From Podarcis cretensis (lineage: Eukaryota): 64,000 nucleotides of DNA. How positions within the stretch are numbered: position 1 is the first letter of the stretch; each line of letters begins with the position of its first letter. Under the pieces are notes generated by a model that was given only the letters and a program-made list of their open reading frames with translations, did not search any database and was not told the DNA's origin. The stretch is from NCBI GenBank assembly GCA_951804945.1, contig OX638158.1, positions 31,930,001-31,994,000 on the forward strand, given 5' to 3'. Positions 29,631 to 33,845 of the stretch are shown here, piece after piece. Position numbers and translations under genes: made by a program.

Positions 29631-29870
29631 GATTACTTTGATATAGTAAAGAACCCCATGGATCTTTCTACAATCAAGAGGAAGCTTGACACAGGACAGT
29701 ACCAGGAGCCCTGGCAGTATGTCGATGATATTTGGCTCATGTTCAACAATGCCTGGCTTTACAACCGCAAAACATCTAGAGTATATAAGTACTGTTCCAA
29801 GCTGGCAGAGGTGTTTGAGCAGGAAATTGATCCAGTTATGCAGAGCCTTGGCTATTGTTGTGGACGAAAG
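29631..29870 (+). CDS. EP300: EP300 exon 18 (240 nt), bromodomain
   Basis: tttcag|GATTAC...GAAAG|gtaagg; DYFDIVKNPMDLSTIKRKL...GYCCGRK. Confidence 0.98.
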
Positions 29871-30652: not shown

Positions 30653-30741
30653 TTGGAGTTTTCACCACAGACTTTATGTTGCTATGGCAAACAGTTATGC
30701 ACAATCCCACGAGATGCTACATATTACAGTTACCAAAACAG
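30653..30741 (+). CDS. EP300: EP300 exon 19 (89 nt), RING
   Basis: tttcag|TTGGAG...AACAG|gtaaga; LEFSPQTLCCYGKQLCTIPRDATYYSYQN. Confidence 0.97.
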
Positions 30742-32849
30742 GTAAGAAAATGCTTGGGTACAGCATTGCACCTGCTGTGAAAAATTATATTAGATATAGG
30801 CAGGCATGCACTTATATTTGTAGCATTCTCAGCAGATTACTTCCCATGCAAGCCAAGTGCCTTGTTGCATCAATTGACTTTTACTTCCTGTTTCAGAAAT
30901 TAGGATGTTAATATAAACTCTCCATATGCTTTAGATAAGTTCAAAGCTTTTGCAGTAAAACCATCATTTTTTCCTCTGTATGAAACAGTGCACAGAAAAG
31001 CATGCATGTTTGCATCTTGAGTTCACTGCATTTAACATTCAGTCTTGTCCTAAGGGATACACATTTCCTGTTTTAGATCAGTTATTTCAACCAAAGCTGT
31101 AGTTGTAAAGCTGTGTTTTGTTTGAGCCGCGTGAAAAGCAGGGTGCTTGCAAGGTCAGAGAGGGGCTGACTTCACTCTGCCTCTTACAGTCTCTCACGCT
31201 CAGCTAGAATTTCTATGGTAGTAGCACTCCTGTGTGTATGCTTGGGATCTCTTAACTATTGAGGCATAACTGTCAAGTGTTCCTGAGTATGTACTTTTGT
31301 TTAAGAAGCTAAATCTTTCACTGCATCAGACCAAGATCTACCTGGTCCAGCATCTTTTATGGGAATTTCAGTAAACCAGCAACTTCTCTGTACTCCATTG
31401 GATCTGCAGCCTTCAGTTTGTTCTCGATAGCTCTTTTCTGAAGTGGAAATTAACTGAGGAGTGAATTCTGGAGTTGTTTGATTAAATAATCATCACCGTG
31501 CATCTTAATTTTACCACCTACATGATGATGGCAATCTTTCTGAAGACTTGCTTTCTGTGATAGCACGGTTCTATGTTCTGCTTTGGGGTTGGAAAACATC
31601 TGATAGGAAAAACTGTGTTTGGAGCTCTTTTAAGGGAGGAAGCAAAACTGAGAACACAACTTTTTCACGTTTTTTGTCAGGAGTATTGCTGCAAATCATG
31701 CTTTGGGTGGGTTGCTGAAGTAGATAACTAGTTCTTTAACAAATCTAAAGCTAAGCTTTAATTTATTTCTATAACTTTACAGCTTCATGCCATAAGTCAT
31801 TTTTATCACAAATGCCCACTTGAGTAAAGAAATCATCATATGTATACATATGAGCTGAGATCCAAAGAACTGCTGTAGGTGTGTACATGGGCTAGGGCAT
31901 TGCTACTGGATTTTTTTACCTTTAATCAGCAGACTGTCATGCCATATCACAGCTTTTGAAATTAAGAGGAGTTTCAAAATCAATGTCGAATGGAAGGTTG
32001 CTGTCCAAAACATGCAAGGCAAAGCCCCCCCCCCCCCCCAGCAGAAAACACTAAGTGGTTCTTTGGACACTGGTCTTTTGAATGTCCAAATCAATGTTTG
32101 TCATTGTATCAGTGTAATAAATAAACTAACCTGTTATAGATAGGAAACATAGGTGGTGAAGAAGTGATCCGTTCCTTAGCAATTACATTTCCTCTAGTGT
32201 TGGTTTTGCTTTGCTTTATAATACTGTCACAGTTTTGTTTTTTGTTTTTGTTTCTTTTTGTTGTATGTTTGCACTCAAATTAACTTACTTAGCAATGGAA
32301 AGGCTGCAGTTTCTGTGCACTCTTGAGGGTAAAAAAACATCTTGAGTAAAGCATTCAACATTAATTTAGATGAAGATGGAATCCTTTTAATATGTCAATT
32401 ATACATCAATTTGGAGGCATGGAACATCAGTACGTCACATATTAAGAACATACATATGCATATCTGATTGTCAGATGCCTTAAAGCACCTGTCATTTTGG
32501 CAGATCATGAACAATTACATAGAAATTGTTTTGGGGATGGTTACTGCTGCTTTAAACAGATGTTGCAAACAAAAAATGCTTTGAGGGGAAGGACTGGCCT
32601 GTCAACATTTGAGCATTCTCAAGATGGATTGTTTTCACCCCTTTCCAGCCCTCTCCTGGCAGATGTTCTTGTGAAAAGAGTTGCTACCCTGATGCAGATG
32701 TCAGAGCAGCAATTGCTCTTACCCTTTCTTCATTTTGATTCTCTGCTTTATTGTAGCATTGATTATTGAAATGAGGAGGGCATGGGCATACTAAAATGGA
32801 ATACTCTTTTTATTTGCTATAATTTGCTGCTTGTGATCCCATTTGAGAG

Positions 32850-33196
32850 ATTTAATGCTAATCTGTGCTTTGCCTTGGCTTTCTGCTTTGTGTTGTCCTG
32901 TCTTGCTTCTGTGTTTTTGTTTTTCGTCCTGCAAATCCCTATTTCTTTGTTCGTGTGTGTGTGTTGTTTTTTTATTTCTCCTTCATGCTTGTCGTTGTCT
33001 GCACTTGGCTTTGATTGCAAAAAAACCAACCCAAACAAAAAAACAAAACAAAACACAAACTCTGGGTCCCATAAATCTTCATCATTGAATGTCCCTGTCG
33101 CCGTTGATGACCTGCTCTCTGCTCCCGCCCCCCTCCTTGGCCTGCTGTGATTGGTGGCTCCGTTGCTTGGCTTGGGCTGTGTTGTGTGGACGGAAC
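32850..33196 (+). promoter_or_regulatory. AG-exclusion zone with distal branch-point candidate (TGCTAAT, 32856-32862) and long U/UG-rich tract upstream of exon 20
   Basis: No AG dinucleotide between 32848-49 and 33197-98, checked line by line. Confidence 0.75.
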
Positions 33197-33228
33197 AGTT
33201 CACCCAAATATGGCCTTCTTGCCGACAG

Positions 33229-33309
33229 GTATCATTTCTGTGAGAAGTGCTTCAATGAAATTCAAGGAGAGAGCGTTTCTTTGGGGGACGACCCATCACA
33301 GCCTCAAAC
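33229..33309 (+). CDS. EP300: EP300 exon 20 (81 nt canonical; 111 nt if the upstream acceptor at 33199 is used), RING
   Basis: cgacag|GTATCA...CAAAC|gtgagt; RYHFCEKCFNEIQGESVSLGDDPSQPQT. Confidence 0.95.
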
Positions 33310-33845
33310 GTGAGTAGCTATCTCCTTTCTAATTATTTTTAAATTTCTTAACAACATTTATCATAGCATTAGTCAATCTCATACTCTAAATACTATTAAA
33401 CAATTTACATCAAATTTATGGTAAAATTCCTTATTTAATGCTGAGGCCTTGTGCAATTATGGGAGGAACAGAGGACAGGAATATTATTTGAAAACTAGAC
33501 AAACCTTATGTTTCAGAATGAGCTTTAGCTTTTAAAACACATATTTTGGTGAGAATATGAAAAACCACTTTTGAAAAGTAGAAGCATTCTTCCAGTTTAT
33601 ATGCTAGATTTAGTAACGACCTAATGTTTAAGAATTCCAATCCCACCTGAGCCTGCAAATTTTTTTGTTGCTTCTGCTTGTAGAAAAGAGACTTCACAGC
33701 TTGCTTTAACTTTTAACTATTTTGTGCATGTGCATGCACACACATACACACAATGACTACCTTTAATCTGTTGAGCAGGAGATCCAGTAAGGAATTGTTC
33801 AGGCAGGTACCTAACTGAAAGCAGGCCTAAATTTGAAAACACGGG

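What the first reader, a model, noticed from the sequence alone, without database searches (positions are those of the whole stretch)
32850..33196. 347-nt AG-exclusion zone with a distal branch point before exon 20
Seen: no AG from 32850 to 33196, where roughly 20 would be expected naively, even through an A-rich stretch. The zone opens with TTTAATGCTAATC (candidate branch A at 32861), followed by more than 110 nt of U/UG-rich tract with many YGCY and (UG)n motifs. Established: long AG-free zones mark distant-branch-point introns in which the spliceosome scans to the first AG, typical of regulated exons. YGCY and UG repeats bind MBNL and CELF/TDP-43. Inference: a dedicated splicing-control module at the HAT-regulating RING domain.
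Basis: partly seen in the sequence, partly recalled or inferred. Interest (0 to 1): 0.8.

Follow-up and report, generated by a model that had tools for sequence, protein, structure and literature searches.

The report
Conserved AG-free zone before p300 RING exon
A 347-base stretch with no AG in an intron of a reptile p300 (EP300) gene is real and is kept in fish p300 and in the sister gene CREBBP; together with an almost unchanged branch-site-like element at its start, it looks like an ancient distant-branch-point module for an upstream splice acceptor that adds 10 amino acids to the RING domain.

Summary
Window 32850-33196 has no AG, against about 24 expected from the window rate and 6-12 from local composition. 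It is three times longer than any other AG-free gap in the window.

The gene is a squamate-like EP300. The zone does not end at the canonical acceptor (AG 33227-28). It ends at an in-frame AG 30 nt upstream (33197-98).

The key result is comparative:
- Six metagenome loci (amniote EP300, two teleost ep300 copies, CREBBP, one distant gene) all keep the -32 AG.
- All keep a 246-414 nt AG-free zone above it. In five independent zones AG is 0 against 43 expected, while GA is 39.
- More than 60 database p300/CBP models carry the 10-aa insert (SSPKYGLLAD) and 111 lack it.

Best reading: a distant branch point plus AG-exclusion zone serves the upstream acceptor, and the canonical acceptor probably uses its own branch site (TTCAC) inside the 30 nt.

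No branch was mapped and no RNA reads could be laid. The MBNL/CELF/TDP-43 claims are untested. No paper describing this was found.

The parts
30653..30741 (+). Upstream coding exon (LEFSPQTLCCYGKQLCTIPRDATYYSYQN, ends AG|gtaaga). It is the splice donor partner of the intron that holds the zone.
   Evidence: the translation matches p300 chains in the PDB, residues 12-40 of 7vhy_A.
32595..33315 (+). Conserved non-coding element plus exon. Apart from the upstream exon and a 140-nt piece, this is the only part of about 6 kb that still aligns with a non-squamate amniote EP300 locus (L001).
   Evidence: blastn HSP 32595-33315; identity is 92% in the zone and 91% in the exon, and 51-59% (unalignable) in the rest of the intron.
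32848..32849 (+). Last AG upstream; 5' border of the AG-free zone, 12 nt before the candidate branch A.
32850..33196 (+). AG-free zone (347 nt).
32856..32862 (+). Candidate distal branch site TGCTAAT (branch A 32861). It is 337 nt from the G of AG1 and 367 nt from the G of AG2. The heptamer is identical in five lineages.
32854..32900 (+). Conserved block 1: the branch site plus the start of the U/G-rich tract. It is 93.6% identical over 47 nt in CREBBP (L003/L004) and 93.3% over 45 nt in teleost ep300 (L005). It is unique in the window.
   Evidence: also seen translated in ORFs P0009, P0010, P0014, P0015.
32863..32980 (+). U/G-rich pyrimidine tract following the candidate branch site (Py 0.76-0.77, U 0.56-0.57), including a (TG)5-6 run followed by T7.
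33018..33060 (+). A/C-rich microsatellite-like stretch (AAAAC-type). It holds 31 A and a single G, and that G follows T, so no AG arises.
33101..33147 (+). Mid-distance alternative: branch-like CGTTGAT / TGATGAC (A 33107, A 33110) followed by a C-rich tract of 80-88% pyrimidine, 88-91 nt before AG1.
   Evidence: It is kept in L001 but only loosely in the other loci.
33138..33171 (+). Conserved block 2 (CCTGCTGTGATTGGTGGCTCCGTTGCTTGG), 27-60 nt before AG1. It is conserved in CREBBP and partly in teleosts. Function unknown.
33197..33198 (+). AG1: upstream, in-frame acceptor (YAG in all six loci) with no adjacent pyrimidine tract. It is the 3' border of the zone.
   Evidence: Database isoforms that start the exon here.
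33199..33228 (+). 30-nt extension. With the upstream exon's AG it codes SSPKYGLLAD in the long isoform. It also holds TTCAC (A 33202, 26 nt before AG2) and CCTTCTTGCC (33214-33223), the likely branch site and pyrimidine tract of the canonical acceptor.
33227..33228 (+). AG2: the acceptor that gives the canonical protein (…YSYQN|RYHFCEKCF…).
   Evidence: the two exons abut in PDB p300 chains with one residue (R) between them, which is the split codon AG|G.
33229..33309 (+). 81-nt RING-coding exon ((R)YHFCEKCFNEIQGESVSLGDDPSQPQ(T)), with donor gtgagt at 33310.

Best explanation
The zone is the AG-exclusion zone of a distant-branch-point 3' splice-site module in the EP300 intron that precedes the 81-nt RING-coding exon.

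Proposed mechanism (inferred unless marked as shown):
1. U2 snRNP and SF1 recognise UGCUAAU (branch A 32861), and U2AF recognises the U/G-rich tract just downstream.
2. After lariat formation, the 3' splice site is taken as the first AG downstream. That AG is AG1 at 33197-98, 337 nt away.
3. Any AG arising in between would be used instead and would break the reading frame. This explains why AG, and only AG, is purged from the zone.
4. Splicing to AG1 adds 30 nt, giving the insert SSPKYGLLAD between YSYQN and RYHFCEKCF in the RING domain.
5. The canonical short form uses AG2 (33227-28), most likely with its own proximal branch site (TTCAC, A 33202) and short pyrimidine tract, both lying inside the 30 nt.
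6. The choice between the two protein forms would therefore be a choice between two branch points. The highly conserved sequence between them would be the place where regulators act.

Shown here:
- The zone and its borders.
- Its conservation in EP300, teleost ep300 and CREBBP.
- Conservation of the branch-like block and of AG1.
- Both protein forms exist in database gene models.

Inferred:
- Which branch point is used for which acceptor.
- That the choice is regulated.
- Any effect of the insert on acetyltransferase (HAT) autoinhibition.
For: (1) AG-specific exclusion.
- Window zone: 0 AG against 6-12 expected, with 7 GA.
- Five independent zones totalling 1610 nt (window, L002, L005, L003, L006): AG 0 against 43.4 expected, GA 39 against 43.4. 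No other dinucleotide falls below 0.48 of its expectation.
- The part lying more than 100 nt from AG1, taken alone: 1110 nt, AG 0, expected 23.3, GA 23, Poisson P 7e-11.
- In each locus the zone is the longest AG-free gap wherever its 5' end lies within the contig (L002's zone runs off the contig start).

(2) Borders.
- AG1 sits at -32 in all six loci and is always YAG.
- The 5' border lies within 12 nt of TGCTAAT in the window, L001, L003/4 and L006. In L005 the zone extends 73 nt further upstream.

(3) The TGCTAAT heptamer is identical in five lineages and lies in a block 93% identical between EP300, CREBBP and teleost ep300 (E about 1e-14).

(4) Pyrimidine content is 0.68-0.77 over the 60 nt after the branch site, but only 0.50-0.55 over the 40 nt before AG1 in the jawed-vertebrate loci. 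AG1 therefore lacks its own tract, as expected for an acceptor found by scanning.

(5) AG1 is a real acceptor.
- Conservation begins sharply at SSPKYGL.AD in read-through ORFs of many species.
- The 30 nt never vary in length and stay open in frame.
- More than 60 full-length p300/CBP models carry the insert, from teleosts, frogs, a snake, mammals, a turtle, skates, a shark and beetles. 111 models lack it.

(6) This architecture matches the defining description of distant-branch-point exons in PMC1431707.

(7) The whole zone is as conserved as the exon between a squamate-like and a non-squamate amniote gene, while the rest of the intron no longer aligns.
Against: - No branch was mapped and no RNA read was seen. 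Use of A 32861, and even the ratio of AG1 to AG2 in this animal, is therefore unknown.
- Other branch-like sites with a strong C-rich tract lie 88-91 nt before AG1 and could serve AG1 without the far site.
- 92% identity over about 450 nt is far more than a branch site plus an AG-free spacer needs, so the element must do something more, or something else.
- The database isoforms are mostly automatic predictions.
- In L005 the zone starts 73 nt before the branch-like site, and in L002 the contig ends before the site could be seen.
- The host species of L001 and L003/L004 are unknown.
Confidence: 0.65

Rival explanations
1. The far TGCTAAT block is a binding platform for a splicing regulator (intronic enhancer or silencer), not a branch site. 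The branch for AG1 would be one of the mid-distance sites (A 33107 or A 33110, with the C-rich tract 33113-33147). The far part of the zone would lack AG only because any AG downstream of strong U2AF/PTB-type tracts risks becoming a cryptic acceptor.
For: - Mid-distance branch-like sites with an 80-88% pyrimidine tract exist.
- Conservation of 45-47 nt in block 1, and of the whole zone, is more than a branch site needs.
- Block 1 is rich in UGCU/UGCC and UGU motifs.
Against: - The far part of the zone alone shows AG 0 against 23 expected in 1110 nt. This is hard to explain unless lariats form upstream of it.
- The 5' border of the zone coincides with TGCTAAT in four of five lineages.
- The mid-distance sites are not conserved in CREBBP or teleosts. 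For example, A 33150 is G in L003.
- YGCY is not enriched beyond composition.
Confidence: 0.2
2. The distal branch point serves both acceptors. The choice between AG1 and AG2 is made at the second catalytic step, by masking of AG1 or competition between the two, rather than by two branch points.
For: - One conserved branch-like site and one long tract.
- Conserved block 2 just upstream of AG1 could bind a factor that masks AG1.
- Synonymous positions vary less in the 30 nt (3 of 11) than in the exon (17 of 26), so the 30 nt carry constraint beyond coding.
Against: - Published rules, as summarised in PMC1431707, say that AGs compete only when less than about 12 nt apart. Here the distance is 30 nt.
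- TTCAC plus CCTTCTTGCC inside the 30 nt form an ordinary branch-site/tract unit at 26 nt from AG2 and are conserved.
Confidence: 0.1
3. The conserved element works at another level, as a DNA enhancer or an unknown RNA, or the AG-free run is simply low-complexity T/G-rich and A/C-rich DNA.
For: - The zone contains microsatellite-like parts and separates A-rich from G-rich parts.
- ATTGG (reverse CCAAT) motifs occur in block 2, twice in the teleost loci.
Against: - AG is uniquely absent while GA is at its expected count.
- The zone ends exactly at a conserved, annotated acceptor.
- There is no Rfam match.
- The fold is no more stable than shuffled sequence, z 0.47, and there is no block1-block2 duplex better than shuffles.
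- Zones that do not align with one another are all AG-free.
- ATTGG is not kept in CREBBP.
Confidence: 0.04

Closest known systems
Distant-branch-point exons with long AG-exclusion zones (Gooding et al. 2006, Genome Biol 7:R1, PMC1431707). Examples: PTBP1 exon 11 (zone 381 nt, branch at -351), PTBP2, alpha-tropomyosin exon 3, GABBR1 exon 23.
   Same: - An AG-free zone of hundreds of nt ends at a used acceptor.
- A consensus branch site and pyrimidine tract sit at the zone's 5' end, and AGs occur at the normal rate just upstream.
- The arrangement is conserved in orthologues.
- It is associated with alternative splicing.
- The size (347 nt; branch at -337) lies within the range of the verified cases.
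   Different: - The zone belongs to the upstream member of a pair of acceptors 30 nt apart, not to a cassette or mutually exclusive exon.
- By the paper's own algorithm, the canonical acceptor has a zone of only about 30 nt, so a screen of canonical exons would miss it.
- Conservation reaches across the EP300/CREBBP duplication and into teleosts.
- EP300 and p300 are not mentioned in the main text of that paper; its data files were not searched.
- The branch is not mapped here.
Elements separating the polypyrimidine tract from the 3' AG (REPA, G tracts; PMC6339879).
   Same: A G/U-rich, purine-containing spacer (33148-33196, with GG/GGG runs) lies between the pyrimidine tracts and AG1. According to that abstract, this class is linked to alternative 3' splice sites.
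   Different: Only the abstract was read. The spacer here is far longer than a G tract. No hnRNP H/F-type regulation was tested.
Tandem alternative acceptors (NAGNAG and longer in-frame pairs).
   Same: Two in-frame acceptors produce protein forms that differ by a short insert. L001 additionally has AGCAG at AG1.
   Different: The spacing is 30 nt, too far for direct AG competition by the published rules. The two sites appear to have separate branch sites.

Membership tests
Distant-branch-point / AG-exclusion-zone exons (Gooding et al. 2006) | AG-free zone of at least 100-150 nt directly upstream of a used 3' splice site (AGs within 12 nt ignored) | tested here: met
   347 nt upstream of AG1 (33197-98). 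AG1 is used in more than 60 database models. For the canonical AG2 the zone is only about 30 nt, so the feature is not met for that acceptor.
Distant-branch-point / AG-exclusion-zone exons (Gooding et al. 2006) | Consensus branch site towards the 5' end of the zone | tested here: met
   TGCTAAT lies 12 nt after the last AG. All six pairing positions can pair with U2 (two of them G-U wobbles, by my own reckoning). The heptamer is identical in five lineages.
Distant-branch-point / AG-exclusion-zone exons (Gooding et al. 2006) | Polypyrimidine tract adjacent to the distant branch site, and no good tract at the acceptor | tested here: met
   Pyrimidine 0.77 and U 0.57 over the 60 nt after the site; pyrimidine 0.53 over the 40 nt before AG1. 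Caveat: a C-rich tract lies at 33113-33147.
Distant-branch-point / AG-exclusion-zone exons (Gooding et al. 2006) | Arrangement conserved in orthologues | tested here: met
   Zones of 344, at least 351, 414, 246 and 252 nt in L001, L002, L005, L003/4 and L006.
Distant-branch-point / AG-exclusion-zone exons (Gooding et al. 2006) | Branch experimentally mapped to the distant site (lariat RT-PCR, mutagenesis) | not testable with these tools
No lariat data were available.
Distant-branch-point / AG-exclusion-zone exons (Gooding et al. 2006) | Associated exon is alternatively spliced | tested here: inconclusive
   Both forms, with and without the 10 aa, occur among database models, including isoform pairs within one species such as Myripristis murdjan and Sphaeramia orbicularis. 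No transcript reads were examined here.
p300/CBP acetyltransferase gene (EP300 orthologue) | Exons encode the p300-type core (bromodomain-RING-PHD-HAT) with p300-specific residues | tested here: met
   Exon peptides are identical to PDB p300 chains and score higher against them than against CBP. Further core exons were located in the window. tblastn identity is 86% to snake p300 and 64% to turtle CBP.

The most novel reading that the evidence does not exclude
The intron before the RING exon of both p300 and CBP carries a splicing switch older than the EP300/CREBBP duplication (the insert itself is also present in beetle CBP). In this reading, a distant branch point about 340 nt upstream selects an upstream acceptor and inserts a strongly conserved 10-aa segment into the RING domain, the domain that blocks the HAT active site. 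Vertebrates would then make two forms of each enzyme with different autoinhibition, under control of the ultraconserved intronic element. A 2025 review of p300/CBP regulation does not mention this layer (no occurrence of 'splic').
Probability: 0.3. Interest if true: 0.85.

Novelty: new member of a known kind. Interest (0 to 1): 0.7.

Why it matters
p300 and CBP are central transcriptional co-activators, disease genes (Rubinstein-Taybi syndrome, cancers) and drug targets. Their RING domain holds the acetyltransferase in check (PMC12547938).

If this reading is right:
- A conserved alternative acceptor puts 10 residues into that domain in both paralogues. That points to a functionally distinct enzyme form which structural and biochemical work, done on the short form, has not examined.
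- The module gives concrete handles for testing: the branch A, AG1, and blocks 1 and 2.
- About 340 nt of 'deep intron' in EP300 and CREBBP would be mutation-sensitive. Any new AG there should be harmful, which matters for interpreting intronic variants.

For splicing biology, it would be a distant-branch-point module of unusual evolutionary depth, coupled to a pair of acceptors rather than to a cassette exon.

Tried and rejected
No junction or lariat evidence was obtained. No letters of 29694-29746 were sent to any search tool afterwards; local scripts that compared sequences used only 30001 onward.
- RNA structure. The zone folds no better than shuffles, z 0.47. A block1-block2 duplex is no better than shuffles in three lineages. 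Rejected.
- Known RNA families. No Rfam match in the six loci at E up to 0.01.
- Tandem-repeat origin. Only the A/C-rich 33018-33060 is repetitive, which does not explain the zone.
- MBNL and TDP-43 motifs. YGCY is not enriched beyond composition, and the (TG) run is short and not conserved.
- Exon skipping. No database model lacks the 27-aa exon, but the search design could not have found one.
- Literature. No paper holds the insert peptide, and none links EP300/CREBBP to this acceptor or to a distal branch point.
- Joined models.
- Human check. The hosts of L001 and L003/L004 are unknown. I did not take them for human, for two reasons: there are no Alu or 7SL-like matches in about 12 kb, and the extension has K where the two eutherian p300 models have Q. 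This is not proof, and I searched for no more of these contigs.

Full report
**Observation.** Window 32850-33196 contains no AG. The bordering AGs are at 32848-49 and 33197-98. At 349 nt the gap is three times the next longest on the + strand (119 nt), and longer than any CT-free gap (174 nt). The window-wide AG rate predicts 24 AGs in a stretch this long. The zone's own composition predicts 11.8. Composition taken in 20-50 nt blocks predicts 5.8-8.8, which allows for the T/G-rich part (32850-33016) and the A/C-rich part (33017-33062) keeping A and G apart. Block shuffles gave zero AG in 2e-4 or fewer of trials. GA, the mirror control, occurs 7 times.

**Gene and exons.** The + strand carries an EP300 orthologue.
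- The exon after the zone (33229-33309, 81 nt) translates to YHFCEKCFNEIQGESVSLGDDPSQPQ, identical to p300 chains in the PDB and a better match to them than to CBP.
- The exon before the intron (30653-30741) gives LEFSPQTLCCYGKQLCTIPRDATYYSYQN.
- In the PDB chains the two peptides are separated by one residue (R), which is the split codon AG|G. The canonical junction is therefore 30741>33229, using the acceptor AG2 at 33227-28.
- Further core exons follow downstream.
- tblastn of database p300 proteins against the window is best for a snake (86%), against 81-84% for birds. Other notes of the scan mention Sauria SINEs in this genome. The animal is squamate-like.

**Where the zone ends.** The zone ends at AG1 (33197-98), 30 nt upstream of AG2 and in frame. 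Splicing to AG1 would add SSPKYGLLAD. Between the two AGs lie TTCAC (A 33202, 26 nt before AG2) and CCTTCTTGCC. Together these form an ordinary branch-site and tract unit for AG2. Under the published definition (PMC1431707), the canonical acceptor's AG-exclusion zone is only about 30 nt. The 347-nt zone belongs to AG1.

**Is AG1 real?**
- A word search with the 74-aa in-frame read-through ORF (33089-33310) returned three ORFs from other organisms. In these, conservation starts exactly at SSPKYGL[LIV]AD.
- The exhaustive search with 38 aa (33197-33310) returned 79 proteins. Many are read-through ORFs that keep this segment. Some are full-length CBP/p300 models with the segment between YSYQN and RY.FC, and others lack it.
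- Two further word searches, with full-length fish p300 as query, showed more than 60 full-length models with a 10-aa insert (11 aa in beetles). They come from many teleost p300 and crebbp-b genes, frogs, the snake Pseudonaja textilis, mammals (Tamandua and Ursus p300; Pipistrellus CBP), a turtle CBP, skate and shark CBP, and Diabrotica CREBBP. 111 models lack the insert, and some species have both forms.
- The 30 nt never change length in six loci. Among five loci their variable sites fall 0/1/3 by codon position. Third positions vary less there (3 of 11) than in the exon (17 of 26), as expected if coding and splice signals overlap.

AG1 is thus an annotated, ancient alternative acceptor in both paralogues. 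This agrees with the sister note s1-839473.

**Is the AG-free zone conserved?** A scan of metagenome contigs gave six loci:
- L001: an amniote EP300. Its next exon reads TINKEQ…PEL, as in birds, a crocodile and mammals, not TINKDQ…PEQ as in the snake and the window.
- L002 and L005: two teleost ep300 copies from one assembly.
- L003 and L004: CREBBP, 99.98% identical to each other; the exon matches CBP best in the PDB.
- L006: a more distant gene.

All keep an AG at -32 and a long AG-free zone above it: 344, at least 351 (contig end), 414, 246 and 252 nt. In each case this is the longest AG-free gap of the locus wherever the zone's 5' end lies within the contig. In five independent zones (1610 nt), AG is 0 against 43.4 expected and GA is 39 against 43.4. 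No other dinucleotide is nearly as depleted. The part more than 100 nt from AG1, taken alone, has AG 0 against 23.3 expected and 23 GA. Outside two blocks these zones do not align with one another, so they are independent evidence.

**The branch-site candidate.** It opens a block (32854-32900) that is 93.6% identical over 47 nt in CREBBP and 93.3% over 45 nt in teleost ep300. In both cases this block is an isolated island of similarity, and it is unique in the window. The last upstream AG lies within 12 nt of it in four of five lineages. The distance from the branch A to AG1 is 337, 337, 338, 236 and 259 nt. The 60 nt after it are 68-77% pyrimidine. The 40 nt before AG1 are only 50-55% pyrimidine in the jawed-vertebrate loci, so AG1 has no tract of its own. 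This is the signature described for verified distant-branch-point exons.

**More than a spacer.** Against L001, only three parts align: 32595-33315, the upstream exon, and a 140-nt piece. The zone is 92% identical, the same level as the exon (91%), while the rest of the intron sits at chance level. A second block (33138-33171) is shared with CREBBP and partly with teleosts. This degree of constraint suggests dense regulatory use of the region. Which factors bind is unknown. YGCY motifs are not enriched beyond composition, and the (TG) run is short and not conserved, so the MBNL and TDP-43 suggestion has no support yet. RNA structure is not indicated, and no Rfam family matches.

**Reading.**
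- Most likely (0.65): a distal branch point at 32861 with its tract forms lariats, the first AG downstream (AG1) is used, and the long isoform results. The short, canonical isoform uses TTCAC and AG2.
- Rival (0.2): the far block is a regulator platform, and a mid-distance branch (A 33107 or A 33110, with the C-rich tract) serves AG1.
- Rival (0.1): one distal branch serves both AGs, with the choice made at step 2.
- Rival (0.04): a non-splicing function, or chance.

**Limits.**
- The hosts of L001 and L003/L004 are unknown. I did not take them for human, because there are no Alu or 7SL-like matches in about 12 kb and the extension has K where two eutherian p300 models have Q. I searched for no more of them.

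**Novelty.** Distant-branch-point exons with AG-exclusion zones are a known class. I found no paper that describes this instance, the insert peptide, or a RING splice isoform of p300/CBP. A 2025 review of p300/CBP regulation has no occurrence of 'splic'. The long isoform is present in automatic annotations. I file the finding as a new member of a known kind, notable for its depth of conservation and for where it sits in the protein.

Noticed in passing
window 32192-32329: A second, isolated piece of the same intron still aligns with the non-squamate amniote locus L001 (72% over 142 nt, E 1e-8). It lies about 500 nt upstream of the zone. Function unknown.
   Followed up: no
proteins P0021-P0057; P0024, P0038, P0046, P0052, P0074: Invertebrate CBP genes and models carry a related segment at the same place, before RY(T/I)FC: SLKAYGLASD, NPTPSLFSD and SGQFGISCD types. 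Some full-length models include it and others (P0073, P0079) do not. The insert, and perhaps the alternative acceptor, may predate vertebrates.
   Followed up: partly
L001 3070-3075: L001 has AGCAG at AG1, that is, two AGs 3 nt apart (a NAGNAG-type tandem) at the upstream acceptor. This would add or drop one further codon.
   Followed up: no
L002 about 270-340 and L005 about 380-455; window 33148-33156: The motif TGATTGG (a reverse CCAAT box if read as DNA) occurs twice, about 35 nt apart, upstream of AG1 in both teleost loci and once in the window. In the reptile-type CREBBP locus it reads TGGTTGG. It also appears as 'LSVIG' in several fish read-through ORFs.
   Followed up: partly
window 32782-33150 (+) and 32817-33203 (-): ORFs of 122 and 128 aa span the zone on both strands. 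They are by-products of the lack of AG/CT (no TAG on + and fewer stops on -) and of low A content. Gene callers have predicted such ORFs in many species, which is what made the cross-species search possible.
   Followed up: yes
window 33229-33309: The RING exon is 81 nt, a multiple of three, so skipping it would stay in frame. Known distant-branch-point exons are often cassette exons. No evidence for skipping was seen or could be sought here.
   Followed up: partly
window 32951-32975: GTGTGTGTGTGTTGTTTTTTTA, a (TG)n(T)n arrangement like the polymorphic tract before CFTR exon 9 (from my own knowledge). Here it lies about 230 nt from the acceptor and its length is not conserved in L001.
   Followed up: partly
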